A stretch of DNA of 64,000 nucleotides, taken from positions 620,001 through 684,000 of the forward strand of contig NW_025766981.1 of the NCBI RefSeq assembly GCF_003918875.1, given 5' to 3'. This document shows, piece after piece, positions 9,457-63,608 of this stretch. A model generated the notes under the pieces. It saw only the letters and a program-made list of their open reading frames with translations, did no database searches and was not told where the DNA came from. The position numbers were made by a program, and so were the translations under genes. The stretch's first letter is position 1. Each line of letters begins with the position of its first letter. The DNA is from Haliotis rubra. Lineage: Eukaryota.

Positions 9457-12400
9457 ATGGAGACGAAACCACTTCTACAAAAACCCAGGAAGGAGGAATC
9501 CCTCCTGAATATCAGGAACTTAGTGATGGGAAACATTGTAGCTGTTCTGTACAATATTGCGTCAGCCTTCCATGCCCCGACTCTCGACCAGTACCTCTAT
9601 AAACGGGTGTCGTTGGAAGTATTCGGCAACAACACAGGTGACAGTTTCAGTCCAGCCAACGTTACCTGTTTCACCAACAAAACATCCGAAGGCTACATTC
9701 TTCAGGAAATGGCCCAGAAAGCGACAGCAAACCAACAGATGTACTTTTCCCTCGTTAATAAAGCTGCAGCATTTTTTGGATCTCTAGTTCTTGGATCGTA
9801 TTCTGATTATTTCGGCAGGAAAGTCGTGTTCATTTTACCAGCCATAGGCGACATGCTGAGGAGTGGACTGCTCACGGCCATCATCCATTGGGAACTGGAT
9901 CTGAATTGGTACTACATCGGGGAAGTTCTCTGTGGATTGGGCAGTACGAGTAACGGTATACTTCTTGCTAGTTATGCTTATGCCGCAGACAATACGCCAC
10001 CCCGAAAGTCTCGGACAATAGCTATAGCAGTCATAGACACAACCAGGAACATTGCGTATGCTGGAACCAGTGCTGCCACAGGGTTCTTCATACAGGACAT
10101 TGGGTATTTCTACCCATCCCTCGTGTCTGCTGCCATCATGCTGGTGCTCATTCTTGTTGTAGTCTTTTTCATAAGAGAGAGTAAACATTCTCTCAAACAG
10201 ACCCACAAATCGAAGGTGAACCTTACCCAGGGGATAAGGGACGTGGTAGGAATGTACCTGTTTGACAATACCTGTCGGGTACGGAGTCTTTTCTGGTTGG
10301 GTCTAATGTGCTACTTCTTCTCCCAGATGAGTGTTAATGGACAACTCAATATAAACACTTTGTTTATGTTGAACCTACCGTTCTGTTGGACGCCGGAAAA
10401 GATTGGCTACTTCACAATGGCATCTTCGATGGTGACCCAGGTTCTCGGTGTGCCGATGATCAAGGTCCTGCATTACTGTATAGGGGACGAGGTCATTGGC
10501 GTCCTCAGTGCCTTTACCGTCACAGTTGCCGACCTTTTGCATGGCTTTGCAACAACAGACTGGATGATGTATGGATGTAAGAAATAACTTCACATTTTGA
10601 AATGTTCAGTTGGTATGAAACTGTATATAATATAAACGTTTAATTTATTTTGTTTGTTGTTTAATACCGCACTCAGTAATATTCCAGCTATAAGGCGGGT
10701 ATAAACGTTTTAGCATATTCTTAACTTTGTCCCAAGTTGATTTCCAGTTTCTAAATTCAAGATGCAATGGCGGGAGCCTTTTCTTTTGCTGCCGTACCAG
10801 TGATCAGAGCAATAATGTCCAGAATGGCCCCGAAAGACAGCCAAGGTATGTGCTGAGTTTCACAATTTCGTATAAATACTTTCATTGTAAGATGTATTCC
10901 CTAAAACGTTCGCGAACACCTGGTGTCATTGTCATTTTAGTGATCCATTCATGTATTTTTCACAGCTATTTTCTGCTTTACACCAAACGGTTTCTGGGGA
11001 TAGTTAAGACTATCTATAGTTTTATAGTCGGCTGCGTTCATTGTGTGCCGTAAGTGAAGGACATTGAATGCTCCAGATCCTGAGATACCAGTGATATATG
11101 CGTACCACACATCAGCACACATCAATAGGGCCTGTAAGTAGGTCGCGGGACTTGGCGAGACCTTACTACTTCCGGTAACAAACAACGTTTCACACCTTTT
11201 CGAATGGTCTCATGGCTGTCAGTTGACAGTAAGGAAAAGATCATCCTTGCAGGAATAACAAATTTCCGATCTAACCATCCCCAAATTTGCCAAATATTAC
11301 GATTGTCATCAGCTGTGACAGTCAAGCATGGCTTGGGCGATGCAGAGTCTACCCATTAAATGCATTGTTCAATGCGACATCCTTGTTCATTTCCACCAAC
11401 GACAGATGAATTGGTATTCAAATGTTAATATAATAATAATAATAATGCATTTGTTTAGCGCCTAATGTCCAACCAGTGCTGCTCAGTGGCGCTGTGCAGA
11501 GAAAGTGGAGAAACTTAGTAGGTAGTTTTTAGTTGGCCCCTAAATGCTTCCAGGGAAGATACTGATCTCAGTTCAACTTGCTAGCTCTGTCTCCCATGGA
11601 TGTTTTTGTAGCTGGCATTTTCAGGCTGCCTCATTTCTCAGACCTCAAGACACGAGTTGGACGATAGATTTCGATTATACCTTTGAGGTAAGCTGGTGAA
11701 TTGATGTCATAGAGGGTTGAGTAGGTGATGCAAATTATTTTGTACCGTATTCTCCTCTTTACTGGGAGCCGGTGCAACGACCTCAGCACAGGGGTGATGT
11801 GTTCCTGACATTTTGTCCTGGTTATGATCCTGGCAGCTCTGTTTTGTACAAGCTGGATATGTTGGATTGCTGCTGCTCTGACACGAGGGAGTTCACAGTA
11901 GTCTAGGCGTGAGATGACGTATGACTGAACTAAAATTTTGGTTGTGTCAATGTCCAAATAGCGGCGGATTTTTCCTATTCGGCGGAGATGAAAGGTTGCT
12001 GATCTTGCTGCTGTTAGGGCTTGTGATTCTGGTGACATTGAAGAACGGAAAACAACACCCAGATTCTTCACCTGGGGCACAGGGCAGATAGACTGATCTT
12101 CAACTGTGAGACTACACTCGCCTATTTTGCAAAGCTGCTGCCTAGTTCCAATGATCATGAACTCAGATTTGTCGTCGTTGAGTTTCAGAAAGTTGTTTGT
12201 CATCCATATCTTGATGTTAGCGACACAGCTCTCCATAACATCTTTTGCGTGTTCAACATTAGCTGGTGTAATTCCTATGTAGAGTTGGTTATCATCTGCA
12301 TAACCATGGAATTTTATGTTGTGACTTCGGATGATATTGCCCATTGGAAGAATGTACAGTGAAACCAAAATCGGACCAAGCACAGAGCTGGTGGTATTAT

Positions 12401-13733
12401 AACAATACTTTCCAATAAGGTATCATCAGTAATGCGTAAATTCTGTAACACTTCAAAAACATCCAGAACAAACTCAAAACAAACACTTTATTCGGTCGCT
12501 TTGACACTTCAGATTTCAATATTGAAAATAACTCTTCCGGATTGCTGACACTCTGATAATGTTCGGGGTTTTGTTTTGGTTTTGTATGTGTTGTTATATA
12601 CCATTCAAAAACAGAAGGGGGTATTGGATTACAAGATTGATAAAATTCAAATGATGAAGCCAAGGAGGAAACAGATGATGAAGAGAAATTAAGGGAAAAT
12701 GTGACAATTTATTCCATTCCATTGGAAATGTTTCATCTGTATGGATATATATTACGTTTTCTCACATGCATTGGCATTGACCAGTGGTATGCTCGCAAAA
12801 TGGAATATCCCCTACTTTTTTTTAATGGTATATTATGTGGTCATATGTTCTTATGTTTTTATTTCCCAGAGTGTAGGTTATCTAATGGTGTCAAAGTGGA
12901 TGTTGAATGAACAAACGTGTGTTTCAGGATCTCTGTTTACAAGTCTCACCCTGGCTGACCACGTGGCTGGGTTGATCCTCAGCCCTTCGTTTGCTTTCAT
13001 CTACGAGGCCACCATGAACTTTATGCGAGGTTTTATCTACCTTGTCTTCGCCAGCACTCATCTAGTTGCATTTGTGCTATTGATGTGAGTATGTCTCCAG
13101 CCGAAATACCTTTTGCGTAATACTGTCCCTTAGCTGCGCCAGGATCCGATGATAACGTATTCGAGCCCCACTATGATCTGATTTTGATCCTTCAGTAGCT
13201 CTATACCCGTGTTCTATTTCACTAAATTGATAAAATGCTGACTTGCGCCGTACTTGGTTTGCCGGCAATAGGATAGATAGATACCACATGGCGATATTAC
13301 TAAAATATTGTTCCAACTGAGTGAGTGAGTAAGATTTTACACCACCTTTAGCAATATTCCAGCAAATATCACGGCGGGGGACATAGAAATGGGTTTCACA
13401 TTCAAGTAGTACACATGCACGGAATCGAATCCAGGTCTTCAGCGTAACGAGCGAACGCTTCAACCACTAGATTACCCCCAACGTCCTTGTTCCCAGAGAC
13501 ACAAAACATAAATGTGTATATTGAGATATAAGACTCCACTATAATCGATGTGGTATCACAGACATCTGAATACGACATTAATAAGCTATTTTATCTTTTC
13601 CTTCAGATTGTTTGCATGTTTGACATATAAGCACAACAGGCGTATTGAACACGAGGACACTGTGACAATACAGGACAAGGAATGGCCTCAACAGTCTTCC
13701 CAAAGCAACCTGGCACAGAGCACTGAAATGTGA
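9457..13733 (+). CDS. SLC46: SLC46-family (PCFT/SLC46A3-like) MFS transporter, copy 1 (most divergent), 495 aa
   Basis: Exons 9457-10576, 10762-10845, 12928-13084 and 13607-13733, all GT-AG, 1488 nt in frame. Motifs GSYSDYFGRK, ASYAYAADNT..SRT, PFCW, VIRAIMSRM and QGSLF. AATAAA at 13821. Confidence 0.9.
11427..12395 (-). mobile_element. 5'-truncated L2-clade LINE in intron 2 of copy 1
   Basis: ORF 11631-12383 contains LGPIL, YADDNQLY, LKLNDDKSE, KNLGV, SRLDYC and QNRAARII..EHITPVL. The 3' end GGCGCTAAACAAATG is followed by an (ATT)n tail. Confidence 0.9.
13318..13480 (-). mobile_element. SINE family A
   Basis: Reverse complement of the family A consensus, with (GTGA)n at 13318. Confidence 0.8.
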
Positions 13734-14346
13734 AGAACACTTCAGGCATTGAGCCAACGATGTCATTCGTCCACCACCGATACTATGCAAATATGTCATG
13801 TACATAATAATGTTTGAATGAATAAAATTAAATTAAAAACTATCCATTCATGTTTACATGTGTCATCAAAATTATGAATGAGCAATGCAATCATTCATTC
13901 AAAAGCAGTACCATAGAGGTCAGACTTTTGCTTACAAAATCAACAAACTTGATGCAGGTGTTGTAACATACATGCATCAAAACAGTTGTCGACATTGTAA
14001 ATTGCTAAAGTTACCAGTTATTTTCGGAAGCACTGCTGATTTCCTATAACAACATCTAATTGATATGTTATGAAAGAATATTCCAATCTTCTCGTAGATA
14101 GAGGGACAAAGACAGACAGATCGGGGGTTTTCATGCCCATTTCGAGGTGAAAACGGAGAAAAGTGTCAAAAGATTTTGGTCCAGTTTGCTACCAACATTA
14201 CAGCAAATTATGTGTTGCATTTTATTAGAGATCCAGGATATCTGACCTTCATCATTCATACAGGCAAGGTCAACTGAGTACCTCAGAGACGAGACACGAA
14301 CATGTATAGTAACATCTAGACATGAAAAGTTTGGTACTTTAGCCAC

Positions 14347-18142: not shown

Positions 18143-21100
18143 ATGGAGTCTACACCGCTACTAGAAAGAAAGGACGAAGGTGACAAGTCGAAGCTGGGAA
18201 ATCTACTCAAGGCCAACGTTGTGTTTCTGGTGTTCCATTTGGCTGTCAATATCCGTAATCCGCTGGTGACACAATATGTTTACCAGAGGTACTACGATGA
18301 GGAGTTCGACAACAGCACCAACACCCTCAATCAAACATCTAAGTGTTACGTCAATGAGTCGGATCCAGGATACCTGTTACAGGAAAGGGTTCAGGAAAAG
18401 ACATCGGACTTTCAAACAATACTGACAGCCATCGGAAGTTCCTTAGCTGTAATTAGCTGTATGTTCTTGGGGGCCTATTCTGATTATCTTGGTCGACGAT
18501 TCCTCTTTATAGTACCTTTAATTGGAGAGAGCATCAGGTATGCATCTGTAACAATTGTTATTTACTGGAATCTAGATCTGAGATACATGTACATTGGTGA
18601 GGTGTTTGAAGGAATTACAGGGGGATACAATGGTGTGATTCTGGCTAGCTATGCCTACACGGCTGACAACACACCACCTAAGAATTCCAGGACAATTGGC
18701 ATCGCTGTGATAGATTTCACAACCTATCTGGCAGCCGCAGCTTCTTCAGCCAGTACTGGATACTTCATCAAAGACACAGGATTCCTCTATCCCTCAGTGA
18801 CTACTTTATCAATCATGCTTCTCTCTGTGCTCTTTGTCATTTTTCTTCTCCCAGAAACTATCAACACAGATAGAAGATCCCAATATCCATCTCCGGTGAA
18901 GGCGGTGAAAAATGTCTTTGGATTCTACTTTTCAAAAGATTTTGGACCAAAGAGAGGTCTTTTCTGGCTTATACTTGCATCATACTTTTTATCAATGTTT
19001 TGCGGGGCAGGAGTGTCCACTGTTCAATATCTTTTTCAACTAAACCTGCCTTTCTGTTGGGGACCAGAGCTCATCGGGTATTTCAATATGGCGATGTGCC
19101 TTGGAATGCAATTGCTGGGGATTCCAGTCATCAAACTTCTCCATCTGTGCACCTCAGACCCAGTAATAGGTATCATAACAGCTTTCATACAAGCAGGAGC
19201 CTATGTCCTTATCGGCCTGGCCAGCACGGATTTTATGCTTTTCTCATGTAAGTAGATTGGTTTGTTGTTAAACGCCAAACTCAACAATATTCCAGCTATG
19301 TGGCGGTGGTCTTTAAAAAATCGAGTCTGATCCAGACAATCCAGTGATCAACAGCATGAGTATAGATCTACACAATTGGGACACGATGACATGCGTCAAC
19401 CAAGCGAGCTTGACCACTCAAAACCGTTAGTCGTCTCTTACGACAAGGATCGGCTGCAGAAGACCAATTCTAACCCGAAACTTTACGTATTTTTCTCATG
19501 TAGGTCATCATTACAATAAGCGATTTCCTACATTTCTACAAGTTTTAAAAAAGGATAGAAATATTCATATAACAACATGCATAACATATGTTTGGATTTA
19601 CAAGATGTTCTTTAAACTTTGTGTGCTATATGACAGTAATGTCAGCTTTTGCTAATTATTGTTGGATGTCTTTGTTGTAGTTGTGGTGCCCAATGGTGTT
19701 GCTTCCCCGTTCCCACCGACAGTGAGAGCTATCATGTCGAGGATGGCTCCTCCTGAAATGCAGGGTGAGTTCACAGACAGACGCTCAAGGACAGGGTCAT
19801 GCACAGCGTTACTGTGGCAGTCCCCATTTCCAGTGTAACATTCAAAGACACTAATTTAAGCTAATGAAATCAAAACATTAACTGGAAACAGATAACTTCA
19901 AACAAGAGGGAATGATTCCCAAAATGGCCTCAAGAAGCAAGATTGTTTTTTAGTACATTATTAACTAACTTTAAAGACGGGAAGGTCTCACTGAATCCGA
20001 CAATGAGATTGATTTAACCACATTTATCGTGCATAGTTTCCTCAACATGTTTGATGGTGTCTGAGCAGTGATATGTTATTAACTGATACGTGCATAACGG
20101 AAGCCTGGAAAGAACTCTTTCTTCGTAGGCTACTGCATTAATGATATTGATTGATTTGTTGTTGTTTAACGCGGCACTCATCAATATTCCAGCTATATAG
20201 CGGCGGTCTGTAAGTAATCCAATCAGGACCAGACTATCCAGTGATCAACAGCAAGAGTATCAATCTACGCAACTGGGATACGATGACATGTGTCAAACAA
20301 GTCAGCGAGCTTGTCCACCGATCCCATTAGTCGTCTCTTAATGTTATGAATAAGAAGGTAATATTATCAATACATATGTAATACGGTGAATACGTATGTA
20401 ATATCTGAACGTTATTTGCCAGGTTCTCTGTTTGCCGGTATTGGACTTGTGAACATCATCTCTGGGACCGTAGGGATTACAGCTTTCAACGAGATCTATA
20501 ATGCCACTGTGGAGATGCTTCGTGGCTTCGCCTTTTTTCGCCTGTGCGGGATTCGAGTTCTTGTCAGGAGTGATAGTATTGTGAGTACACACCATATTCT
20601 AATGTAACATATAAACTTATTTCTATATGTTGTTTTTACCCTTTACTATTAAATACGTAATTCTGCATTCTGAATTTTGTTTGGAAGAGAATTAGTACCA
20701 GTCTTTTTTTAACAACCACGAAATGTTATTTACATCTATGTAGATGTTACTCTTCTTCTACGAAGGTGGTACTCCAATTTACGTGTTCGATATTACCATC
20801 GACATAGAAGTAGATATCTATTGACTAATCGACTTGGTAACCATCTTTTCTCGAGTAGTCGGCAATAGTTACAGGTCTGTTTTATGCAAAATCTGGCTTA
20901 TTGACCGATTTGTTTCACCTTTTGAGTGAGTGAGTGAGTTTAGTTTTACGCCGCACTCAGCAATACACAAGCTATATGGCGGCGTTCTGTAAATACACGA
21001 GTCAGGACCAGACAATCCAGTGATCAACAGCATGAGCATCGATCTACACAAGTGGGAACGATGACATGTGTCAACCAAGCCAGCGAGCCTGACCACCCGA

Positions 21101-24100
21101 TCCCGTTGGTCGCCTCTTACCACAAGCATGGGTTACTGAAGGCTCATTCTAACCCGGACCTTCACGAGTTTTCACTTTTAGAGGTACTATCAGAACATTC
21201 AATACAGTTACTCTTCATAGTAAAAGGTAAAACGAAAATAGACAACCAACATACTACTAATTATTTATATAATTCTTGCTTAAAGTGTATGGAATGTGTG
21301 TTGTGACTATACTCAACTAATTTCACAACACAATATCACGATCTCATTTGCGATATTACACTGCAATATATGGAGATGAACGTAGCTTACGCGAAGATAA
21401 AAGTAACTTTTACGTATACAGTATAATCTACAGAGAGAATAGAAACAATTGAGACTACTTTTGCAATACCCATATGTTTCCAATTTGCAACTGCATCGTT
21501 TAGGTCGCTACAGCTGCGGTATTACTGTTTGTACAAGTGATTACTTAGTGAATGATAATATTATAAAACAGCTCTATACATATTTTGAAAATTGTGTGGC
21601 CTTGTTGTTGAGAACATCTGTTCTCGGTTGCGATCAGGTCACTGCACCTGTGTTTACATATCTATCACCTGAAAACTCGCCCATGTACAATCAGAGTGGC
21701 ACTGATGGCATATCATCACTAGAGGACTATCTCTTCGTCATTACTTCTGATCACCCAGATAAACACGTCTTATTATGTGGTGACCATAATGCAAGAATCA
21801 ACGACTTTATAGATTATATACTTTCTGATAGCCTAGACTTTGTCCAGGACTCTGATGATTATCCTAGTGATGATTTTGATTTGCCAAGAAATTCCAAAGA
21901 CAATTTAGTTTATAACAATTACGGTGTTAAGTTAGTGTAAATGTGTCGCACATGCGGTGTTCACATCCTTAATGACAGGATTTTTAAGGATAAATGGTGA
22001 ATGTATTACTCATAAGCCGGTTCAGTGTTGTTGACGATAATTGCCTCGTCTTCTCTTTTTTCCTCACATGACAGATTTTGGTGTCGGTACACTTGACATG
22101 TCCTTTCACTTTCCATTACACTGTTCACTTGACATCAACATCCATAAACAAAGCTCTGACAAAGCATCCACATCATATCACACGCACAACATCCCTGATG
22201 AACCTAACACTGCAAAATCAGAAACAACTAAATGGTTTAAGTTTTTATGGATCACGGACACTGACAATAATTTCATTACAAACTTCACAAACACCTACAA
22301 TAATGTTTATCCAACATGATAAATAGTAACATTGACATGGCTATACAATATTTTGTAAACCTGTTCAACCAAACTGCAGAACACACTAAGAGACTGTACC
22401 CTGGTGGGACAATGAACTGGACAACATTATACAACAGAGATACACAGCATTAAGGTCACATAGAGACAACAAAACGGGTATTTCTCTATTCAGAAATTTA
22501 AGATCCATCTTCAAGAAAACCTTTTTAAAGAAAACAACCGAGTACTTTGGGAAACAGAAAGATAGATTAGTAGAGGAAAGAAAAGACCCTAAATTATGTT
22601 AGAAAATACTTAAGGAAAAACGGAGTTCACAGGGTTTATCTAACCAAATCACAGATGAACAGTGGGTAACACACTTTATAGAGCTCCGCAGTACAGATAA
22701 TCAAACAGACTACACCTCCCACTGCAGTACTTCCAACATGGACTCTTATGTACACTAAACAAACCAATAACAGAACAGGACATATTAGCAAGGATTTCAA
22801 ACTTAACAAATAACAAGACACCTTGACCAGATAGGCTTGCCACAGAGTTTCTTAAAGCAACACAACATAACATTATCACACCACTTACATTTCTTTGTAA
22901 TAATATTCTCAATGCAGGACACTTCCCAAACAGCTGGGGCAAGAGCATAATATGTCCTTTACATAAATCAGGAAATAAACACGACGAAACAATTACAGAG
23001 GCATTTCACTCATTAAGACCCTTTGTAAGATTTTTGCCTTAGTACTGAACAAAAGGCTACAAATTTGGTGTGATGAAAATAACATTAAATGAGGCCAAAG
23101 CAAGTTTTAAAGCTGGTTACTTTACTGTGGATCAAATGGCTCTTATTCCAAGGTACTGCTGCAAAACGAAGGGAAGATTCTACTGTCTCTTCGTGGGATT
23201 TGCGAAGGCATTCGATACACTAAGACATGATGTTCTTTTAGCCTCTTTACATAGGGCTGGAGTATCTGGCAAGTTTTATAATATTATTGAATCAATGTAT
23301 TCCAATCTTTAGCCTGTGTCAGAAACTAAACATAGTCTTTCATCTTGTTTTAAATGTTTTGTAGGTACAAGGCAGGGGTGTATTCTAAGCCCACAGATAT
23401 TTCATATATTTATTGATAACCTTTATAAGAAATTAGAATCGGGGGAGGTCTTCATTAATCATTTGTTCCCAAATTTATGTGCACTTATGTTTGCAGATGA
23501 CATTTCGGCACTATCTGGCACTTTTAACTAACTTCAAAAGAAATTAATTGTTTGGGAAAACTTATGTAATAGTACGGGGATGAAAGTTAACTTAAACAAA
23601 ACTAAGATTATTGAAATGGGGGGCCTCTTCGTCATTATGAGAAATGGTTCTATAATGGTACCCCTGTTGAATCGGTTTTATTTTATAGATATTAAGGATT
23701 AGCTGTCAATCCCAAGCTTGTCTGGAGTAAGGCCCAGCCGTGTCTTGCATCGCAGGCCTCTATAGCTAAATGGTTTTCAGAGAAAAATTGGTGACATAGT
23801 TTGTACTGATCTACTTAAAGGAGAATACTAACAAAAACAAAACTTTTCATAGGAGTAAAGGAATTCTAAATGTCACCTTCCGTGCTTAAAATTGAACCAA
23901 AAGTTTGTAAAATTGCAATAAAAACACACAAAAAACGTACTCGTAGTTCCACCTATTACGGAAACACCCGACAGTTAATGAGCAGTGGGGGTATCACGTG
24001 ACATGACGTCATATGTGCCTGTTGCTGATAGCTTCCTCTTTGATTTTACCTCACAACTTAACAGAGTCTATGGATTCTAAAGCAATAAAAGATGTTCCTG

Positions 24101-29825: not shown

Positions 29826-30055
29826 TTGGTTGGTTGGTTTGTTGTTTAACGCCGGACTCGGCAATATTCCAGCTGTATGGCGGTGGTCTGTAAATAATCG
29901 AGTCTGGACCAGACAATCCAGTGATCAACATCATGAGCATTGATCTACACAATTGGGATACTATGACATGTGTCAACCAAATCAGCAAGCCTGACCATCC
30001 GATTCCATTAGTCGCCTCTTAGTCGCATCGGTTGCTGAAGACCCATTCTAACCCT
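29826..30055 (-). mobile_element. SINE family B in intron 1 of copy 3
   Basis: Consensus match at the same position as in copy 2. Confidence 0.8.
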
Positions 30056-31280
30056 TTTACCATGTATGTGATCATGACAGTCTTTTAAGTGATATTCTAC
30101 ACTTCAACTAGTTGGCATATTTTTTGACAAAAGCAAAGACATTCATATCACAACGTATATAAACATGTGTTTGCCTGTATAAGATGTATTTTTTAATTCT
30201 TGCGCAAATTATTTGGTGTGACATATGAGACAATATTATCAGTGTCTGCTATTACTGTCGGGAGTCTTTGTTGTAGTTGTGGTGCCCAATGATGTTGCTT
30301 CTCCGTTCCTGCCGACGGTGCGAGCAATCATGTCGATGGATGGCTCCTCCTGAAATGCAGGGTGAGTACACTGACAGACGCTCAAGGACGGGGTCATCCA
30401 CGTCTTTTCTGGCGTTAGTCATGAATTAAAGTGTAACATTCAAGGACACTCATTTCAGCGTGATCAAATCAGAACAGGACTTGAGAACAGTTAACTTAAT
30501 TGAAAAACAGGAAATGATCCCGAAAACCATCTCAGGAAGCAAGGGTGTTGGTATTACATTATTAACTAGCTTTGAAGACAGGAGGCTCTCACTGAATCTG
30601 ACAATGAGATTGATTTAACCACATTTATCGTGCATAGGTTCCTTAACTTGTTTTAATAGCCTCTGAGCAGTGATATGTTATATGTTAATGCATGTAACAT
30701 GCACAACGGAAGCCTGGAAAGAACTATTTCTTCCAAGGTTACTGCATTAATGACAATATACATGCATATCTGACAACAACCATAGGATTCTGGTAGGCAC
30801 CTCGGTCCCCAGAAGCCCATGCTTACCGTATGAGACGAGCATGTGGATTGGGTGGTCAGGCTTGGCAACTTGGTGATTGCTTGTCATCATATCGTATTGG
30901 TGTGGATCGATGGTCAATCAGATGATTGTGTGGTTAAGACTCGACTAATTGTAAATCGCCGTTTTCCAACAGGAATATTGCTGGGTGATTCGTTAAACAA
31001 AAAAATCTCAAATACTAACTGAATACTTCTTCTAAAATTCCAATTCGTCAGTGTATGTTTCGTAATAATAGAATGACGTCATTCGATGTTTGAAGAGTGT
31101 GCCTATACGATGCAAGAAAACGGGACGGGTTGTCAAGCTCGGTTAGACTGTTGAAAGTGCAATACCTTGTTTAGGTGGTACGTTCTATATCATTTCAATC
31201 CACTGGTCCAGGTTGAACTATTTACACGCTACTGTCATATATTTGGAGGCTTGCTGAATAAAAACTGTATGGTGTATGAT

Positions 31281-31502
31281 ACCCGTGAAGATCCGGGTTA
31301 GAAGTGGTCTTCCGCAAGCCATGTTTGTCATTAAGCGACTAACAGGATCTGGTGGTCAGGCTCGCGGACTTGGTTGACACATGTCATCGTATCCCAATTG
31401 CGTCAATCGATGTTCCTCCTATTGATCCCTGGATTGTCTGGTTCAGACTCGATTATCCAGGCCGCCGCCACATAGCTGGAATGTTTCTGCTTGCGGCGTT
31501 AG
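31281..31502 (+). mobile_element. SINE family B
   Basis: ACCCGTGAAGATCCGGGTTAGAA..GCGGCGTT. Confidence 0.75.
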
Positions 31503-31777: not shown

Positions 31778-31890
31778 AGAATAAGTAGGTAATATTATGA
31801 ATAAGTAGGTAATATTATGAATAAGTAGGTAATAGTATGAATAAGTAGGTAATAGTATGAATAAGTAGGTATTATTATGAATAAGTATTA
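31778..31890. repeat. 20-bp tandem repeat (about 5.5 copies)
   Basis: GAATAAGTAGGTAATATTAT units. There is a single unit at the paralogous site in copy 2 (about 20348). Confidence 0.9.
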
Positions 31891-48000: not shown

Positions 48001-50963
48001 TCATCACATTATAGTAGATTTGAAGTTTTTAAAATTCATTTATTTCACAAGGATATAACATTTTTACTTCAGAGTTTGAAAGTCTGCCAAAAAAGCAATA
48101 AGATATGTGCGAAAATATTTTCATTTTATTTCCTTTTTTTGAGAAAATCATGACTTGAACTCTCATTATGCGTCATCTCACAAACTGAAAATTCACCTAG
48201 GAAATAAACAGGAATTACTCCCCCTATCAAGCTGGCCTTGACATTGACATTTCACGTCAATGTGACAGAAAAGAGTAATGTTTTGATTAAAAAGGCAGAG
48301 AATAGGTAAGAATTGAACAAATCTCTTTTGTAGATCTAAAAAGTATGTGCATTGCAACAAGTGTGACTATTCATTACCGATAAATTGATAATATAAACAC
48401 AAAATACTATTCTTAACTAAAACTGTTTGCTGTTGTAATTTCAAATGTAATTTAGGCTAGTTATTTTTTTTGACAACGTCAAGATTGGTGAACAAACAAG
48501 AACCACACCATGTTGATTTCCACTAACATAGACTTAGGACAAGTCAGAACCTATCCTAGTAATTGTCCTAAGTTAAGATATCCTAGCGCTAGGATACTTT
48601 TCGAGAATAAGGTAGGACACCTATCCTAGACCCTAGGATCAAAGTTAAGATATCCTAGGGCTAGGATCCTTTCGAGAATAGGGGCCCAGAAACGTAGTTA
48701 CAAAGATGTAGCTGCTGAAGTATGGCATCACTCAAGCAAGAGAGTCGGGGAAAGGTTGATTATTGCAAATGTCTTCACACAGATTTAGTCACGAAGATGT
48801 ATACATAGATCTTACATTGAATCATGTCTAGTTGCACATAATTGGCTGTTTGACCATTAAAGTACTGTCGGAAATAGAAACAAAAACTGTTTTTAGGCTG
48901 TTACCCTGTATCCCTAAAATTTACACAACTACCAAAATCAAATGTTGAAATAACCCACATTGGTTCAGTGGGGTGTGTCATAGAATATCCAGAAGTGCAT
49001 GTTTACTCGTAAAATAGGGCAAAACTAAAAAAATACGAATAGCTGCTGAAAACAATAGATGGCAATTAGGTCGCTCAGCCAGGTTTGACGACGGACCGTC
49101 GACTCACCTGGCATGAAATGCACGTGCTACCTACAGGCACAAGGGGTCATCTCAAAGATATTTTATGCTTTTGTCATGTTTATTGAATATGTCTCATCTA
49201 TTTGATTATCATCTTACGTGTCTTTCATAACGTGTATGTTGAGATATGTAAAAGAATATGATACCCATAGGAAAGCTTAAATCAACTATCGTATTAAATG
49301 TCTCAAAATATATAGGTGACAAGACCACCCCAAGATCGACAGGACTGGATATTATTTGTTAATTGTTAAGACATGCCGTTTACTTCCTCCAGTTTAATTC
49401 CCCTAAAGGATTATTTTATCGTAGCTGATATCTCTATGCCCCATGCCAGTACGACCCCAACCACCGTCTGCGACACCCGTCCTGGTTTTGCTTTTGAGAC
49501 AAGCCCTCCTACCTGTTTCTTTTTAAAGTGATAGTGGGGCTCCATGGTAGCTTCATCCTAAATAGTTTCTGTATTAAAGTCGATATGTTTTACGTCAGCT
49601 ATCGTTTATAATGAAGCTAAGTCTAGTTTCAAAATAGGCATTTAAATAGTGTCCTTTGAAATACAATAGCATCGCACACTAATTTGCATAAAGCCATGGT
49701 CTGTTCTAAATAAGTTGCTTTGGACTTAGAAAAAACCGCATTGCTCATTTGAGCACTTATCTCTCCTCAGTAAAGTCCTTTTAACGTTTCCTATCTCCCC
49801 GCCACTGAGACTGTAGTTAGACCGAACTTAGTTTCACAGATATTTCACACTTTCACATTTTAACTTCATAAATGGTAGATATATATGTGATATATATATT
49901 TTTTCTATTTCCGACAGTACTTTAGTGAGCACTATCAGATCATCCATATACCAGAAACCCAATATCAGAATTGGGTGAATGCACAATGTCATGTGATAAG
50001 TTATGAAATGTAACATTTGTTACATTCTTATTCTTACTACAGATTCTAGTACTTTTTGGGGTTGAGTCACATCCGCAGAGTCATGCACCTTGGTGTGCAT
50101 GTTTCCAGCACACCAAGTCAGCCATCTAACCCACTCAGCCAACATGGTTTCCAAGTCGGACAACTGGTAGTCTAGGTCACGTGCCTGACTCTGAAAGTGT
50201 GGGTTCGAATCCCGGATCCGTCTCAACCCAAAGCGAAGTAGAATCTACACTTTACTGAGAAAGTGTAATCCCAAATATAGCAAATGCCCCTTGTTTTGTG
50301 TTTGCCAGTCAGGTTCCAGACAAGGTTCCAATTCTGATTCCTATGTAAATGCCTACGGTCAGCTGTTGGTTTCAGGATCACTGTTTGCCGGAGTTGGGCT
50401 GATCAACATCCTCTCAGAAGGTTTAGGCCTACCAGCTTTCAACCAGATGTATGATGCAACTGTAAAGATATTCCGTGGTTTCGCCTTCCTCGTCTGTGCT
50501 GCTTGTCATTTGTTGGCGATAGTTATCATAGTGTGAGTATATGAATGATCATGGGTACATTAAATTTTCAGGAAAATGTAAAGGATATTTTATTTGCCTT
50601 TTTTTATAAAACCTCTTGTGTCTTCAATGCCAGCACCCGCATTACATAGTGATGACGTCTCACGTTCAAACTTTCCAGTCATGTCCAACATCTGATGTCA
50701 TCTGTGTGACATATCTGTTCTACGTAGTTTCAGTATTGTACAAGGTTTAGTCTTCACTGAATACGACGTTTTACAGCCGAAACATGTTTGTATGTTAGTG
50801 TCGACATACATGTGTTTCGTACTATAAGGACTTTTACTCATCCAGTAAAGTAAACACAACTCTTATATATTTTTTGTCTTGCAGGGTGTTTCTGTGTTTG
50901 TCGCGCCGCACCACCGACATTAATACCTCCATCAATGTTGCCATCAATGACTCCGATCGGTAG
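42070..50963 (+). CDS. SLC46: SLC46-family transporter, copy 5, 475 aa (recent duplicate of copy 4)
   Basis: Exons 42070-43177, 43419-43502, 50376-50532 and 50885-50963; 1428 nt in frame. Intron 2 is expanded to 6.9 kb by TEs. Confidence 0.88.
43515..45101 (+). mobile_element. Degenerate Tc1 transposon in intron 2 of copy 5
   Basis: Left TIR TACACTCTTAAAAAAGAAACG. Transposase remnants at 44192-44915 (IRNRLRE, FSDESRF, GVMVWG, SPDLNQIEH, GGVKRY*). Absent from the copy 4 intron. Confidence 0.8.
45113..45255 (-). mobile_element. SINE family A
   Basis: Consensus match with flanking direct repeat TAGATAAAGAA. Confidence 0.8.
45345..45991 (+). mobile_element. Tc1 deletion derivative
   Basis: N-terminal transposase remnant (DRPRTGRPRVTT..QDR.IR) and right TIR TGCGTTTC.TTTTGTGAATAGTA-TA. 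Same family as 53680 and 63860. Confidence 0.7.
46609..46856 (+). mobile_element. SINE family B
   Basis: ACCCGTGAAGATCC..CATGCTTGTCGTAAGAGGCGACTAACGGGATCGGG..GGAATATTGC..GTTAAACAACAAACC. Confidence 0.85.
46911..47282 (-). mobile_element. SINE with chimeric 5S rRNA/tRNA-like head, Deu/Nin-like core and L2-like tail
   Basis: Minus strand reads GAAGTTAAGCAACGTCGAGCTCGG..CTTGGATGGGTG (5S internal control region), then CACCTAGCTGAAAATGGGTACC, GCGCCTAACAGGCAGCT, and GCGCTATAGAAG..(TTA)n. Absent from the copy 4 intron. Confidence 0.7.
47463..48686. mobile_element. PIF/Harbinger-like MITE, longer copy of the 2038-2802 element in reverse orientation
   Basis: TIRs GGTGCCTATTCTCGAAAG / CTTTCGAGAATAGGGGCC with CTG/CAG flanks. 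The empty site AAGAAGAACTGGAACGTAGTT is at about 37861 in copy 4. Confidence 0.85.
48861..49921. mobile_element. Kolobok-like non-autonomous DNA transposon
   Basis: TIR AGTACTGTCGGAAATAGAAA / TTTCTATTTCCGACAGTACT with TTAA and TTAG flanks. Absent from the copy 4 intron. Confidence 0.75.
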
Positions 50964-52724: not shown

Positions 52725-52887
52725 CGGTGAGGTGATGTACACACTACCTTTGAATATCTCAGGCTCCAGAGCATATCGGCTACTTCAGTATGCTTGTGCT
52801 CCATTCCACACAGGCACTGGTGATTCCATCCACACAGTTGCAAGCAGGAGCCAATGTCCTACACGCCCTGAAAAACACTGACCTCGT
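52725..52887 (+). pseudogene. Relic fragment of SLC46 exon 1 (3' part)
   Basis: Translates to PEHIGYFSMLVLHSTQALVIP..LQAGANVLHALKNTDL, matching PELIGYFNMA..SRQ.LGIP..IQAGAYVL.GLA.T.F. Confidence 0.6.
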
Positions 52888-55817: not shown

Positions 55818-58800
55818 ATGGAGTCTTCACCGCTTCTTGAAAACAAGGCTAAAGAAGAGAAGTCTAAGCTAGGAAATCTACTCAAGGCCAACATTGTGTT
55901 TCTTGTTTACCATCTGTCTATCAATGTCCATGATCCAGTGTTAACACAATACCTTTACCAGAGGTACTCCGAGGAGGTGTTCGACAACAGCACAAAGTCA
56001 GCCAGTCCTGCTAATCAAACGTCCAAGTGTTACGTCAATGAGTCGGATCCAGGATACCTGTTACAGGAAAGGGTTCAGGATCTTACTTCCAACTGTCAGA
56101 CAATACTCACAGCTATCGGACACTCTGGAGCACTTATCAGCTGTATGTTCTTGGGGGCGTATTCTGATTTTCTTGGTCGACGTTTTCTCTTCATATTACC
56201 TTTAGTCGGCCAGTCTCTGAAGTATTTATGGATGACACTTGTTATTTACTGGAATCTGGATTTGAAATACCTGTACATTGGCGAGGTGTTTGAAGGTGTT
56301 TCGGGGGGTTTTAACGGTGTGATTCTGGCTAGCTATGCCTACACGGCTGACAATACACCACCTAAAAACTCACGGACAATTGGCATCGCTTTGATAGATT
56401 TCACTACCTACCTCGCAGCTGCAGCTTCCCAAGTTATTACTGGATACTTCATCAAGGACCTAGGTTACCTCTACCCATCTATAACTACGACTTCGCTCAT
56501 GCTTCTGTCACTAATCCTTGTCGTTGTTCTTCTTCCTGAAACTATCAATAAAGATAGAAGATCCCAATATCCATCTCCTGTGAAAGCAGTGAAAACTGTT
56601 TTTGGATTCTACTTTTCAAAAGATTTTGGACAAAGAAGAAGTCTTTTCTGGCTTTCGCTAACAGCGTATTTCATAACATACTTTAGTATGAATGGTGTTT
56701 TCTTCATGGAGTATCTTTTCCAGCTGAACCTGCCTTTCTGTTGGGGACCAGAGCTCATCGGCTATTTCAATATGGCGTTGTACCTTTCCAGACAAATGCT
56801 TGGGATTCCAGTCATCAAACTACTTCATTTATGCACCTCAGACCCAGAGATATGTATCATAACGTCTGTCATTCTGTCCGTATCCTTTGTCCTCAATGGC
56901 GTGGCCAACACAGACGTCATGATCTTCCTATGTAAGTCATTCTACATCTTCAGAAGAAATTATAATAATTATATTAACACTGTTTAGTCTTTGCTATTGT
57001 GTAAAGTGGATTGTTTGTTGCAGCTGTTTTGCCAAATGGTATTGCAGCTCCTTTGTTGCCAGCACTGCGGGCTATCATGTCACGGATGGCCCCTCCTGAA
57101 ATGCAGGGTGAGTATGCAGGTACATTTTGATGGACTTGTCAGGCTTGCAAACAGAATGAAAACATGGATCCTCGTAGACAGATATGTATGGACACGCGTG
57201 CAAGTGTGATAACAATAGAGGGTCCCATGATATCAACAGTCATACGTCATAGATATTACAGATAACCAATCGGACGAAATGCCTATGGTAGTAATGAAGA
57301 GATTTTTTTTTTTTTTTTTTTTTTTAAATTTATTCATTTTAGATACAAATATACAAAGAACATTTTTTTTAAATTTATTCATTCAGGATCAGTAGATACA
57401 AATATACAAAGTACATGATGTGACAGCACTTGTACACCGTAAATGGATTAAGTAATTAAGAGAACTTATCAATCAAATTTACATACTTAACGCAATTTTC
57501 TAATTAGTAGAAACCTTTATTATAAGATCTTAATTATATCTTCAACTTATGGGTCATGGACTCATGGTTAAATAGACTTGATAACGTCTCCATGGTGATC
57601 CTATCTCAGTGGTGACACTCTTTACAACGACAACCACATGCTTTCCAACATGCAAAGGAGAGGCACACGTTCATCTTTTGTGCTGGTATGAGAGGCATAA
57701 CTAGACAAACATTTCGTCTCTGAAATGAACATATTTTACAGAAAAAAACGTTCATAAATAATCATCATAAAATATAAGGAAAAGGAACCCTGAGACTATG
57801 TTCATTATCAGAAACTATGGTAATCTAGACTTGCCACATATTCTAGACTTGCATGGGCTTCCTTGCACATATTTGTTTCAGGGTCTGTATAAGAGACTAA
57901 GGCATAACCATCAATGCGATCTGCACACAGCGAGAATCTTTAACTGGTTTAAAGGAAATCAAGTAAACTGTTCCTATTCTGAAGCTTTACTTAAAGGTCA
58001 CATGCAACTTTACAGATTCTGATACCTTTCGGTATGGACTTACCGAAACAAATCATCAAAAATGCAAATTCAACTTATAAAGTTGAAAAATAACGCGATG
58101 AAAAAAACCGCGCGAAATCGGAGTTCAAACGATTCACTAATTTTCCCCCGACTTTTCGGGGAAACCTGGTTTCAACAGCTGGGCTGCGCTCATAGCACAT
58201 GCGCAGTGAAATAGGTTCGCGCAACTTGGAAGCGGGCTGTCCGGTGAATACTCGGTGAAGGCTTTGGTGTGAGCTATTATCCTAATGTTTTGTTGATATC
58301 TCACAGGCGCGAGCTTCTATATGTTATGACAGTAAATAAACTGTTTATATGATTTCATTTGTCTATTTCACCACACGTTCTTCTTACCGAGTCACTTTCT
58401 CAGTTCGATACTTAAAAGCAATGTCATTATTTAGCGTTGACAGCAATTTCTAACTGTGATATAGATATGTCGTTGTCACAGACAAAACTCAATGTCTTGT
58501 TTTATTGACACCTGTGTGTCTGCCTGCCTGCCTGCTAATGACAATATTCAATACACAACTGCGATCACTGACCACATGCAATTTGAACTTAACACCAATC
58601 AGGCTATACACCATAAACAAAACGCATTGATTTATGGCCCGAGTTCGGTCTCTGTCACATTATGTAATTACACAGACAGGCAGGTGTGATACTTGAACAC
58701 ATGACATGTTATGATGTCTGTTGATTGCAAAATGTTATACACAAAAAATGAGCCTGTATTTACAAAACCCAACATCTCTATATATACACACACAATGAGC

Positions 58801-61039
58801 CGTGAGGGCATCTGCAAAGGAACCAGCCGTTACACTTGAGTGCACACCCACCCGCTCTGACTGGGTTTGGTATCCCGGCTGCTTCGTTTCTTGGGAAGTA
58901 AACCCAAGTACACAATATTGCACTTTTGATTTGCGATTGTACGCTTATAATTTTGTTTATATGTTTTTTCATAACCAGCAATGTATATTATATGTCATGA
59001 ATAAGTGATAATTGTGTTTTAATTATGTTTGATTTTTTGGTTGCATGTGACCTTTAAGAACTGACTTTCACCATATTCACTTTCTTAGTAGTAAAGTTTC
59101 TATGAATTCATGGAGTATGAACCTTCATAGAGAGATGATGGAAGTTTATGAACATCCAGGCTTTCTTGATCATCTTCGATAATCTCCAGGGTATACGTTA
59201 CGATCACTCTCCACTATACCCTGGATGCATCCACGGCTTGGCTCGATAATTATATTACCTCCTTTTGCTGGCTTCGCATTCTCACAGTAGTATCAAGGAT
59301 GGCTTTTGATGTACCTGTGAAGATCCTGTTTAGAGTTAGTCTTCAGCAACCCATGCTTGTTAAAGGGGCAACTAACGGGATCGAGTGGTCAGGCTTGCTG
59401 ACTTGTTCCAGCCACATGTCTGTAAATAATTGATTCTGGACCAGACAATCCAGTGATCAACAACATGAGCATCATTCTACGCAATTGGGATATCTACAGA
59501 TCATTAGACTATAACTTTATTATCACATTCAGGTGTCCATTTACCATTACCATGGTCTGAAAGCCACAACGTGTCCAATTGACCGTCATTATGCACTTCT
59601 ATAACAACAATCCTGCAGGCTGAAATAGAAATGTATGATAAATACAACTGGAAAAGGAATGAGAGTGCACATAAATACGTTTTCTTTATTACAAATGTTT
59701 TGTAAACTCATTTGTTTAACAAATGTATACCGAATAGTGGAAAGGAGAAAAAATGTAAACAACTAGACAAATATTAAATTAGTTGCTGCATAAGAAGCTG
59801 ATCATATTTTCCAAATCACACATTACAATAGTGAAATCATGTGTTTCTGAAACGCTATGAAATAGTGACGATAACATGTAGTGAGTGAGTGAAGGTTACG
59901 CCACTTTAGCAATATTCCAGCAAAATCACGGCGGGGACACCAGAAATGGTCTTCACACATTGTATTCATGTGGGGATTCGAACCCGGGTCTTCGGCGTGA
60001 CGAGCGAACGCTTTAACCACAAGGCTACCCCACAACCCCGACGCTAACATGTAAACGATAAGGTGAGCTTATCTTCCTCTAATAGTGAACATTGATTTCA
60101 GGATCACTTTTTGCGGGTATCGGACTTGTGAACATCATCTCATTAGTCACTGGGACTACAGTTTTCAACGAGATGTATAATGCCACTGTGAAGATGCTCC
60201 GTGGGTTTGCCTTCTTCGCCTGTGCGGGATGCCAGCTGTTGTCTGCAGTTACCATGGTGTGAGTACAGGTCTTGTACATGTCTTGTTGAACATTCAGGAC
60301 GTCCATAGATAACCCGACCAGTTGATAGTCTCCCTATCTATTTAAGTATCTTGTATGTTTACATTTTACAGATAGGATTTCACTGATAGGATGTCACATA
60401 TTGCAGCTACGTTTGTCGCATACATATTTTGTTCAGCGAAATCTCTAGTTGTTTTGATTAGTTTCTTGTTGCTTCGATAATTCCTCCCTCGTTATTTCGA
60501 GTATTTCTCATTGCTTCGATTATTTATTCGATATTTTAGGTTTCTTTCAACAACCTGAAGATTCGAGTATTTTCTGTCTGTTTCAGATATTTTCTCGGTA
60601 TTTTAATTATTTTCTTCAAATTTTGAGTATTTACTCGTTATGTTTCATTTCCTCATTTCATTCATTTATATCGAGTATTTTCCTACTTTACTTGAAATGA
60701 CAAGGAAGTATAGAAACCAGAAATAGATAGAAGTAACGAGAAACTTCAGAATTCCGTTAAAACTTCAACAGAGGCAACATTAGAGTATTTCCAAGTATAT
60801 TTGGTTCTAAACGCCGACAGAAAAATGGTAAGGACCACCTTCATCTCACATACAGTGTTAGTGTATGTACCCACTGAGATGCTTGCAAGAGGTAAATGTT
60901 AGATGTCACATTGTGCAACTGACAAAAAACTAAGATATTAAACAAATACATATTCATGTGTTGCAGAGTGTTCTTGTATACCTCCCGCCGCAGGATTGTA
61001 ACTGATACCTCCACTGTTGGCATCAACGACAACGTCTGA
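55818..61039 (+). CDS. SLC46: SLC46-family transporter, copy 6, 475 aa
   Basis: Exons 55818-56931, 57024-57107, 60102-60258 and 60967-61039; 1428 nt in frame with GT-AG introns. Confidence 0.88.
57995..59053. mobile_element. Kolobok-like non-autonomous DNA transposon
   Basis: TTAA-AGGTCACATGCAAC ... GTTGCATGTGACCT-TTAA: a perfect 14-bp TIR with TTAA TSD. Confidence 0.88.
59880..60040 (-). mobile_element. SINE family A
   Basis: Consensus match; flanking TAACATGTA repeat. Confidence 0.8.
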
Positions 61040-63121: not shown

Positions 63122-63390
63122 CATGGTCCCTAGTATGGTGATCTACCTTCAGTTGTTGGCGATCTTTAGCCCATTTTACATTGTATTGTCCAAACATGCT
63201 TTTCTACTTTTAAAGATATATGCTAGCTAGTTTTAACTCAATCTGTGATACTCTAGTAATTTTACTGTCCTTCGTTGACAGGGTTTTATATATTATATGT
63301 ATGTATTATGAATTTAGAACTAGTTTTAGTCACGATATGGCTGAAAAATTGCCAATGTGACTTTAAATTTTAACTCACTCACTCACTCAC
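63122..63390 (+). mobile_element. 5'-truncated LINE 3' end with TSD
   Basis: TSD CTCAATAAAAGTAG. The empty site is at about 52644. Confidence 0.75.
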
Positions 63391-63469
63391 TCAATAAAAG
63401 TAGTAAAATAGGTTTTGGTTTCTTATTTGTAAATTATCCTGGAGTCTCAGAGAATATTTCATATATTCT

Positions 63470-63608
63470 TTCGGTGAGCATATCGGCTACTTCCAGTATG
63501 CTTGTGCTCCATTCAACACAGGCACTGGTGATTCCATCCACACAGTTGCAAGCAGGAGCCAATGTCCTACACGCCCTGAACAACACTGACCTCGTGCTTT
63601 TCTCGTGG
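63470..63608 (+). pseudogene. Second relic fragment of SLC46 exon 1
   Basis: EHIGYF/SMLVLHSTQALVIP..LQAGANVLHALNNTDLVLFS, ending where exon 1 ends in intact copies. Confidence 0.6.

What the first reader, a model, noticed from the sequence alone, without database searches (positions are those of the whole stretch)
9457..63608. Tandem birth-and-death array of SLC46 transporters (6 copies plus 2 relics)
Seen: six same-strand paralogs with identical intron positions and phases, related as 1 / (2,3) / (4,5) / 6, including one pseudogene and two exon relics. Established: vertebrates have three SLC46 genes. SLC46A1 imports folate, SLC46A2/A3 and a Drosophila homolog are implicated in delivering peptidoglycan fragments, SLC46A2 imports cGAMP, and SLC46A3 is lysosomal. 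Inference: rapid turnover of this kind resembles immune or xenobiotic gene families. The array may be a repertoire of endolysosomal exporters for microbial ligands or dietary algal metabolites.
Basis: partly seen in the sequence, partly recalled or inferred. Interest (0 to 1): 0.72.

Follow-up and report, generated by a model that had tools for sequence, protein, structure and literature searches.

The report
Abalone SLC46 transporter gene array
This stretch of the blacklip abalone genome holds six neighbouring genes for SLC46-type membrane transporters (four intact, one frameshifted, one dead) that are a slice of a cluster of about 35 such genes which keeps duplicating and decaying; it is real and machine-annotated, and what the transporters carry is unknown and probably not folate.

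Summary
The window is Haliotis rubra scaffold C2091:620001-684000. It carries six + strand, four-exon SLC46 paralogues with GT-AG introns at identical positions and phases (1, 1, 2). They are related as 1 / (2,3) / (4,5) / 6.

Copies 1, 4, 5 and 6 are intact (495 or 475 aa). Copy 3 is a pseudogene with two frameshifts and two TGA stops. The two "relics" are 97% identical copies of one degenerate exon-1 fragment, carried in the copy-6-type repeat unit.

The six are only a slice: at least 34 exon-1 copies lie between about 403 and 774 kb of the scaffold. Gene types have orthologues in three other Haliotis species, while young duplicates group by species.

Selection is mainly purifying (dN/dS 0.2-0.3 between paralogues, 0.11-0.22 between orthologues). 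Replacements are concentrated in TM7, at the positions of PCFT His281/Phe282. Most PCFT folate residues are absent.

The immune or xenobiotic repertoire idea is untested. Neighbouring windows of this scan already reported the same array. Known kind, moderate interest.

The parts
9457..13733 (+). Copy 1. Exons 9457-10576, 10762-10845, 12928-13084, 13607-13733. Intact 495-aa CDS of an old, divergent type (about 41% identical to copies 2-6).
   Evidence: splice sites and translation. One-to-one orthologues are H. cracherodii P0026 (86%) and H. asinina P0054 (91% in exon 1). No full-length H. rubra RefSeq model was found; there is only a 376-aa exon-1 product.
18143..26833 (+). Copy 2. Exons 18143-19247, 19681-19764, 20423-20580, 26801-26833. 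An extra T in the run at 20533-20538 makes exon 3 158 nt instead of 157. This shifts the frame, and TM12 is replaced by a hydrophilic 26-aa tail (459 aa from the MEST start). Intron 3 is 6.2 kb, against 1.6 kb in copy 3.
   Evidence: RefSeq XP_046575163.1 (P0001) keeps the shifted tail. Exon 1 against the H. asinina orthologue gives dN/dS 0.11, so the lesion is either recent or a homopolymer assembly error.
28715..33815 (+). Copy 3, a pseudogene. Exons 28715-29820, 30277-30361, 31953-32109, 33686-33815. Lesions: +1 insertion near 28770, TGA at 29139-29141, TGA at 29598-29600, and +1 T in exon 2 near 30336.
   Evidence: Exon 1 is 95% nt identical to copy 2; dS 0.15.
35648..38847 (+). Copy 4. 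Exons 35648-36755, 36988-37071, 38144-38300, 38769-38847. Intact, 475 aa.
   Evidence: It equals RefSeq XP_046575188.1 (P0006). The AF2 model of P0006 has pLDDT 83.4, and its best PDB match is chicken PCFT 7bc6.
42070..50963 (+). Copy 5. Exons 42070-43177, 43419-43502, 50376-50532, 50885-50963. Intact, 475 aa from the conserved MESTPLL start. Intron 2 is 6.9 kb.
   Evidence: RefSeq XP_046575189.1 (P0053) starts at an upstream ATG at 41938. dS 0.15 and dN/dS 0.29 against copy 4.
52763..52887 (+). Relic 1. A degenerate 3' fragment of exon 1 with an internal deletion, lying 3 kb upstream of copy 6.
   Evidence: HMM positions 309-366, E 0.008. It is 97.5% identical over 120 bp to relic 2. A third copy lies upstream of the 695-kb gene (L009 66-238, 91%).
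55818..61039 (+). Copy 6. Exons 55818-56931, 57024-57107, 60102-60258, 60967-61039. Intact, 475 aa.
   Evidence: RefSeq XP_046575215.1 (P0016) is a 5'-truncated 337-aa model of it. It belongs to a clade with the 685-kb pseudogene and the near-identical 695/704/714-kb copies.
63476..63611 (+). Relic 2. A duplicate of relic 1. It ends at the exon 1 / intron 1 boundary position and lies 2.3 kb upstream of the next, pseudogenised copy, which is outside the window.
   Evidence: HMM positions 338-371, E 0.13. DNA matches to the last ~60 bp of exon 1 in copies 2 and 4 and in L004/L005 have E 1e-7 to 1e-23.

Best explanation
The region is a slice of a large tandem cluster of SLC46-family major-facilitator transporter genes in Haliotis rubra.

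Shown:
- There are at least 34 exon-1 copies in about 370 kb of one scaffold.
- Units of about 6.5-14 kb, each carrying a four-exon gene, have been duplicated repeatedly. This is most simply explained by unequal crossing-over between same-strand copies.
- Some copies decay by frameshifts and stop codons (copy 3; perhaps copy 2). An exon-1 fragment is carried along as a passenger of the copy-6-type unit.
- The ancestral Haliotis array already held the main types. Young duplicates are lineage-specific.

Inferred:
- Each intact gene encodes a 12-TM secondary transporter that keeps the SLC46 scaffold. This comprises the D-x-x-G-R-[RK] loop, the loop-1 and loop-7/8 cysteine pair, an acidic TM5 residue at PCFT Glu185 and the TM10 Arg at PCFT Arg376.
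- These proteins lack the PCFT folate residues Arg148/Asp156, His247, His281, Phe282 and Tyr315.
- They therefore most likely act as proton-coupled carriers of organic anions other than folate. An N-terminal cytosolic E-x-x-P-L-L motif suggests they work from an acidic compartment (endolysosome or gut-facing membrane).
- Paralogues probably differ in substrate preference through the fast-changing TM7 cavity helix.
For: Family:
- Pfam MFS_1 on every copy.
- The only significant PDB sequence hit is chicken PCFT 7bc6, E 8e-33.
- The AF2 model of copy 4 has pLDDT 83.4. Its best fold match is 7bc6 (E 7e-20, TM 0.79/0.86), far ahead of the next MFS at 3e-11.
- RefSeq names the genes SLC46A3-like or PCFT-like.

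Array:
- One search lists exon-1 matches from 403 to 774 kb of C2091, plus two on C7 and one on C247.

Gene models.

Decay.

Duplication units.

Ages and selection:
- Paralogue dS 0.03-0.8 with dN/dS 0.15-0.46.
- Orthologue dS 0.26-0.38 with dN/dS 0.11-0.22.

Lineage specificity:
- Young pairs group by species in a DNA tree: the H. asinina pairs at 100/100 support, the H. rubra 2/3 pair at 86/57.
- H. asinina has its own second copy-2-type gene and a frameshifted copy-6-type copy.

Conserved types.

Residues:
- The alignment was read against the numbering in PMC8978580. One search shows D109, R113, C66 and C298 kept in 29 of 30 copies (only the 685-kb pseudogene lacks D109 and C298), Asp or Glu at E185 in 29 of 30, and none with R148, D156, H281 or Y315.
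- Arg at R376 is nearly invariant.
- E-x-x-P-L-[LIV] occurs in 21 of 30 N-termini.

Hot spot:
- The most variable 15-residue window is TM7 (permutation p 0.002).
- The column of PCFT His281 has 7 different residues among 11 intact clade members.
- TM7 dN is 3-5 times that of the rest of exon 1 in five of the nine pairs compared.
Against: - There are no expression, localisation or transport data. The proton coupling, anionic substrate and endolysosomal site are inferred from a few conserved residues and a short motif.
- Human SLC46A3 uses a C-terminal YxxPhi signal (PMC9896951), which these proteins lack.
- Local dN/dS in TM7 stays below 1 (0.1-0.8), so positive selection is not shown. The second hot spot (TM3) is not a cavity helix in MFS proteins and may only reflect relaxed constraint.
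- Grouping of paralogues by species could come from gene conversion rather than independent duplication.
Cluster-wide counts of intact genes are therefore approximate.
- Protein sets for the other species are incomplete (word-based search, 90% clustering).
Confidence: 0.8

Rival explanations
1. This is a diversified innate-immune or xenobiotic repertoire. The paralogues are specialised endolysosomal exporters that deliver microbial ligands (muropeptides, cyclic dinucleotides) or dietary algal metabolites to the cytosol, and turnover is driven by changing ligands.
For: - SLC46A2/A3 and fly homologues handle muropeptides, SLC46A2 imports cGAMP, and SLC46A3 is a lysosomal exporter of conjugated small molecules (bioRxiv 10.1101/2022.09.29.509906; PMC8228594; PMC9896951).
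- An N-terminal acidic dileucine-like motif is present in most copies.
- The hypervariable TM7 column corresponds to PCFT His281/Phe282.
- dN/dS is higher between young paralogues (0.28) than between orthologues (0.11-0.17).
- There are lineage-specific duplicates and pseudogenes.
Against: - There are no expression or challenge data.
- dN/dS is well below 1 overall and below 1 in TM7.
- Most gene types are conserved across Haliotis.
- Raised dN/dS after duplication is also expected from simple relaxation.
- No link to any immune pathway gene was seen in the window.
Confidence: 0.2
2. This is a stable old multigene family homogenised by gene conversion (concerted evolution), not birth and death. 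The copy-2/copy-3 pair and its H. asinina counterpart would descend from one ancestral duplication, and they look young because they are repeatedly converted.
For: - Both species have two copy-2-type genes immediately upstream of the copy-4-type gene.
- The pairs group by species.
- Same-strand tandem copies with 85-95% identity are good conversion substrates.
Against: - Copy 3 has accumulated four disabling lesions without being repaired from copy 2.
- Similarity between the units extends through introns and flanks at about 86%, as expected for whole-unit duplication.
- H. rubra has two copy-4-type genes against one seen in the H. asinina locus.
- H. rubra has five copy-6-type members against two seen in the H. 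asinina locus.
Confidence: 0.15
3. These are folate (or haem) uptake transporters, that is, functional equivalents of SLC46A1/PCFT multiplied for nutritional demand.
For: - PCFT is the only solved relative.
- Some RefSeq names say 'proton-coupled folate transporter-like'.
- The TM5 acidic residue, the TM10 Arg and the D-x-x-G-R-R loop are kept.
Against: - The positions of hPCFT Arg148, Asp156, His247, His281, Phe282 and Tyr315, listed as mechanistically important in PMC8978580, read Glu, Gly, Ala, variable, variable and Gln in copies 2-6. No copy in the cluster has the PCFT residue at Arg148, Asp156, His281 or Tyr315.
- Identity to PCFT is only about 24%.
Confidence: 0.05
4. This is an assembly artefact: haplotigs or mis-joined repeats inflate the copy number.
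For: Some copies outside the window (695/704/714 kb) differ by only dS 0.03-0.04. The copy-2 frameshift sits in a homopolymer run.
Against: - Window copies differ by at least 5% in exon 1 and far more in introns. They have different intron sizes, TE insertions and private lesions.
- The window contains no N.
- The independent H. asinina assembly shows the same tandem organisation.
Confidence: 0.03

Closest known systems
SLC46A3 (human lysosomal proton-coupled steroid-conjugate/bile-acid transporter; PMC9896951)
   Same: Same family by RefSeq naming and the same 12-TM MFS fold. The abalone proteins carry a plausible endolysosomal sorting signal on a cytosolic terminus. An acidic-compartment organic-anion carrier is the most likely mode of action.
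   Different: The sorting signal is an N-terminal E-x-x-P-L-L motif, not the C-terminal YELL (YxxPhi) shown for the human protein. No Y-based motif is present in the tails of copies 1, 4, 5 and 6. It is one gene in vertebrates against about 35 here. Orthology to A3 rather than A1 or A2 was not tested.
SLC46A1 / PCFT (chicken structure 7bc6; review PMC8978580)
   Same: It is the best sequence and fold match. The D109/R113 loop motif, the C66/C298 pair, an acidic residue at Glu185 and Arg376 are conserved.
   Different: Arg148, Asp156, His247, His281, Phe282 and Tyr315 are replaced. Identity is about 24%. Folate transport is therefore unlikely.
Invertebrate SLC46 members: Drosophila SLC46 homologues implicated in muropeptide delivery (bioRxiv 10.1101/2022.09.29.509906) and C. 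elegans slcr-46.1, a lysosomal copper-related transporter (PMC13216265)
   Same: They show that invertebrates hold SLC46 genes with endolysosomal or immune roles.
   Different: No sequence comparison with them was made here. The copy number in abalone is much larger and the genes are organised as one tandem cluster.
Lineage-specific SLC expansions in molluscs (for example, SLC46 listed among expanded families in Alviniconcha; bioRxiv 10.1101/2025.05.21.655246)
   Same: The same kind of event: expansion of a solute-carrier family in a gastropod.
   Different: That paper only names the family. No description of the Haliotis cluster was found in the searchable literature.

Membership tests
SLC46 family (MFS) | 12-TM major-facilitator fold | tested here: met
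   Pfam MFS_1 on all copies. The AF2 model of copy 4 (P0006) has pLDDT 83.4, pTM 0.83 and a 12-helix-bundle pattern.
SLC46 family (MFS) | Closest characterised relative is an SLC46 member rather than another MFS family | tested here: met
   PCFT 7bc6 is the only significant PDB sequence hit (E 8e-33). It is also the top fold hit (E 7e-20, against 3e-11 for the next MFS).
SLC46 family (MFS) | TM2-3 loop motif D-x-x-G-R-[RK] (hPCFT Asp109...Arg113) and the loop-1 / loop-7-8 cysteine pair (hPCFT Cys66/Cys298) | tested here: met
   Present in 29 of 30 H. rubra copies; the exception is the 685-kb pseudogene. Residue roles are taken from PMC8978580; the Cys66-Cys298 disulfide is from my own knowledge.
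SLC46 family (MFS) | Orthology to a particular vertebrate member (A1, A2 or A3) | not tested
   No vertebrate or fly sequences were included in the trees. The RefSeq 'A3-like' names are automatic.
PCFT-type folate:H+ symporter | Mechanistic residues Arg148, Asp156, Glu185, His281, Phe282, Tyr315 and Arg376 (PMC8978580) | tested here: not met
   Only Glu185 (as Asp or Glu) and Arg376 are kept. Copies 2-6 read Glu, Gly, variable, variable and Gln at the other positions (alignment).
Lysosomal SLC46A3-type transporter | Cytosolic lysosomal-sorting signal (human: C-terminal YxxPhi, PMC9896951) | tested here: inconclusive
   There is no YxxPhi in the C-tails of copies 1, 4, 5 and 6. An N-terminal [DE]xxxL[LIV]-like motif is present in 21 of 30 copies. 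Localisation cannot be tested here.
Birth-and-death multigene family | Tandem paralogues of graded ages with pseudogenes or relics | tested here: met
   dS ranges from 0.03 to 0.8. Copy 3 and the 685-kb copy are pseudogenes, copy 2 is frameshifted, and there are relic fragments.
Birth-and-death multigene family | Lineage-specific gains and losses between related species rather than strict one-to-one orthology | tested here: inconclusive
   Young pairs group by species and copy numbers differ between H. rubra and the two H. asinina loci. Gene conversion is not excluded, the older types are one-to-one, and the other genomes were only sampled.

The most novel reading that the evidence does not exclude
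Abalone maintain a cluster of about 35 SLC46 genes as a diversified repertoire of endolysosomal small-molecule exporters. The fast-changing TM7 pocket tunes each paralogue to a different microbial or dietary ligand. This would be a transporter-level analogue of expanded innate-immune receptor families, feeding cytosolic sensing or detoxification.
Probability: 0.15. Interest if true: 0.75.

Novelty: new member of a known kind. Interest (0 to 1): 0.38.

Why it matters
Vertebrates have three SLC46 genes. Their substrates (folate, cGAMP, muropeptides, conjugated steroids, drug catabolites) are of medical interest, yet what determines specificity is poorly known.

A natural series of about 35 closely to distantly related paralogues could serve as a comparative panel for mapping SLC46 substrate determinants. 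The paralogues share a conserved scaffold and a variable TM7 pocket, and include pairs that differ at only about 9% of residues (copies 4 and 5).

The cluster may also matter for abalone nutrition, detoxification or immunity, which is relevant to aquaculture disease. As it stands it is a machine-annotated gene-family expansion without functional data.

Tried and rejected
I did not try to obtain that DNA by another route, so cluster-wide statements rest on the exon-1 loci L001-L030 and the table.
- Literature searches for an abalone or mollusc SLC46 expansion found only a passing mention in an Alviniconcha preprint.
- The costly exhaustive protein search was not used, because the family was not in doubt.
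Exons were searched by reference, and full-length work used RefSeq proteins returned by the tools (P0006 and others). Splicing and translation were done only inside scripts.
- A possible third micro-relic at 39802-39843 (HMM E 0.29) is not supported.
- A local dN/dS of 2.5 in TM3 for copy 6 against the 704-kb copy rests on 19 codons and is not treated as evidence of positive selection.
- No site-model test (codeml-type) could be run.
- I took the first gene of H. asinina locus L031 for the copy-1 orthologue and rejected that: P0054, the real orthologue, does not map there.

Full report
**Identity of the window**

Exon 1 of the second paralogue is 100% identical to RefSeq 'solute carrier family 46 member 3-like isoform X1 [Haliotis rubra]'. 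The window is G000:C2091:620001-684000, on a 1.21-Mb scaffold. It contains no N.

**Observation**

Six long + strand ORFs all hit Pfam MFS_1 and align along their length. Exon-by-exon tblastn with RefSeq proteins returned by the searches, followed by inspection of junctions, gives four exons per copy. All introns are GT-AG. Intron 1 is in phase 1 after the codon following TM10. Intron 2 is in phase 1 after an 84-nt exon, and intron 3 is in phase 2 after a 157-nt exon. Positions are identical in all six copies. Splicing and translation were done only inside scripts.

**State of each copy**

| Copy | Span | State |
|---|---|---|
| 1 | 9457-13733 | Intact, 495 aa |
| 2 | 18143-26833 | Extra T in the run at 20533-20538; exon 3 is 158 nt |
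| 3 | 28715-33815 | Pseudogene |
| 4 | 35648-38847 | Intact, 475 aa |
| 5 | 42070-50963 | Intact, 475 aa |
| 6 | 55818-61039 | Intact, 475 aa |

- In copy 3, exon 1 has a +1 insertion near 28770 and two TGA stops (29139-29141 and 29598-29600). Exon 2 has a +1 T.
- In copy 2, the shifted frame replaces TM12 with a hydrophilic tail and ends early. The best 19-residue hydropathy is 1.4, against 3.1 in copy 4.
- RefSeq XP_046575163.1 keeps the shifted tail of copy 2. Exon 1 of copy 2 has evolved under strong constraint (dN/dS 0.11 against H. asinina). The lesion is therefore either recent or a homopolymer assembly error.

**The relics**

- A family HMM finds weak hits at 52763-52885 (E 0.008) and 63507-63608 (E 0.13).
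- At DNA level the two are 97.5% identical over 120 bp.
- Relic 2 matches the last ~60 bp of exon 1 of copies 2 and 4 and of two downstream paralogues.
- A third copy lies upstream of the 695-kb gene.
- They are therefore one degenerate exon-1 fragment that has been copied with the copy-6-type repeat unit.

**Relationships**

Protein and DNA trees give 1 / (2,3) / (4,5) / 6.

**Wider context**

- A six-frame search of the genome shows exon-1 matches on the same scaffold from about 403 to 774 kb. There are at least 34, mostly on the + strand, and several carry stops. There are two more on C7 and one on C247. The window is a slice of that cluster.
- Further DNA from the genome could not be fetched.
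- Notes from this scan on neighbouring windows (s1-335140, s1-333104, s1-335220) describe the same array. My own results agree with them.

**Evolution: conserved types**

- A 65-row protein tree places all window copies in a Haliotis-only clade (SH-aLRT 97). A caenogastropod sequence sits outside it on a long branch.
- A second, older lineage of the cluster groups with a Gigantopelta protein.
- Most types have orthologues in H. asinina, H. rufescens or H. cracherodii.
- Copy 1 is one-to-one with P0026 (86%) and P0054 (91% in exon 1).

**Evolution: young duplicates**

- H. asinina locus L031 carries two intact copy-2-type genes followed by one copy-4-type gene.
- H. asinina locus L032 carries a copy-6-type gene and an unannotated, frameshifted second one.
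- In a DNA tree the pairs group by species.
- Paralogue dS is 0.15 (2/3 and 4/5) and 0.10 (the H. asinina pair), against orthologue dS of 0.26-0.38.
- Duplications therefore postdate the species split, or gene conversion has homogenised the copies. I favour duplication for three reasons: copy 3 has kept four lesions, similarity extends through introns and flanks, and copy numbers differ between the species.

**Evolution: selection**

- Selection is mainly purifying. dN/dS is 0.2-0.3 between most paralogue pairs (range 0.15-0.46) and 0.11-0.22 between orthologues.
- Amino-acid change is concentrated in TM7 (residues 280-299 of copy 4; permutation p 0.002).
- The column matching PCFT His281 shows seven different residues among eleven intact clade members.
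- TM7 dN is 3-5 times that of the rest of exon 1 in five of the nine pairs compared, with local dN/dS of 0.1-0.8.

**What the proteins are**

- The only significant PDB sequence hit is chicken PCFT (E 8e-33).
- An AF2 model of copy 4 (pLDDT 83.4) matches it best (TM 0.79/0.86).
- Using the residue list and numbering in PMC8978580, the scaffold features are conserved: Asp109/Arg113, Cys66/Cys298, an acidic residue at Glu185 and Arg376.
- Arg148, Asp156, His247, His281, Phe282 and Tyr315 are not conserved. Folate transport is therefore unlikely.
- Most copies begin with M-E-x-x-P-L-L, an acidic-dileucine-like motif on the cytosolic N-terminus. Human SLC46A3 reaches lysosomes by a C-terminal YELL motif (PMC9896951), which is absent here.
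- My working model is a set of proton-coupled organic-anion carriers acting from an acidic compartment, with TM7 tuning specificity. This is inference.

**Verdict**

The birth-and-death reading is supported in a moderate form. The immune or xenobiotic function is untested. This is a known kind of thing, machine-annotated and already met in neighbouring windows of this scan.

Noticed in passing
window 14333-16183: A 34-bp minisatellite of about 54 units (82-95% matches between units) lies between copy 1 and copy 2. It causes the strong AT skew of that interval.
   Followed up: partly
window 31771-31934: A 20-bp tandem repeat (8 units) sits in intron 2 of the pseudogene, ending 18 bp before exon 3.
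   Followed up: no
window 338-1039, 8108-8878, 11631-12383 (-), 53964-54245: Transposon remnants are present: a P-element/THAP-like transposase ORF, a Tc1/mariner DDE_3 ORF, a reverse-transcriptase fragment inside intron 2 of copy 1, and an HTH_29 ORF upstream of copy 6.
   Followed up: partly
window 52007-52171 and 52884-53079; many places in L001-L030: Two short interspersed repeats (about 165 and 195 bp, 80-97% identical between copies) recur in introns and flanks of most cluster members on both strands. They could promote unequal exchange.
   Followed up: no
window 41938-42069; 55818-56231; 9457-13733: There are RefSeq model quirks. The copy 5 model starts at an upstream ATG (519 aa). The copy 6 model is 5'-truncated (337 aa) although a 475-aa CDS is intact. 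Copy 1 has no full-length H. rubra model although a 495-aa CDS is intact.
   Followed up: partly
L032:17215-18335 (H. asinina CM074533.1): An unannotated copy-6-type exon 1 with a frame break near 17646 lies 4 kb downstream of the annotated gene P0011. It is a probable pseudogene in the sister species.
   Followed up: partly
window 20581-26800 and 43503-50375: Intron 3 of copy 2 (6.2 kb, against 1.6 kb in copy 3) and intron 2 of copy 5 (6.9 kb, against 1.1 kb in copy 4) are swollen by insertions. These include ORFs with no Pfam match, for example 25426-26196.
   Followed up: no
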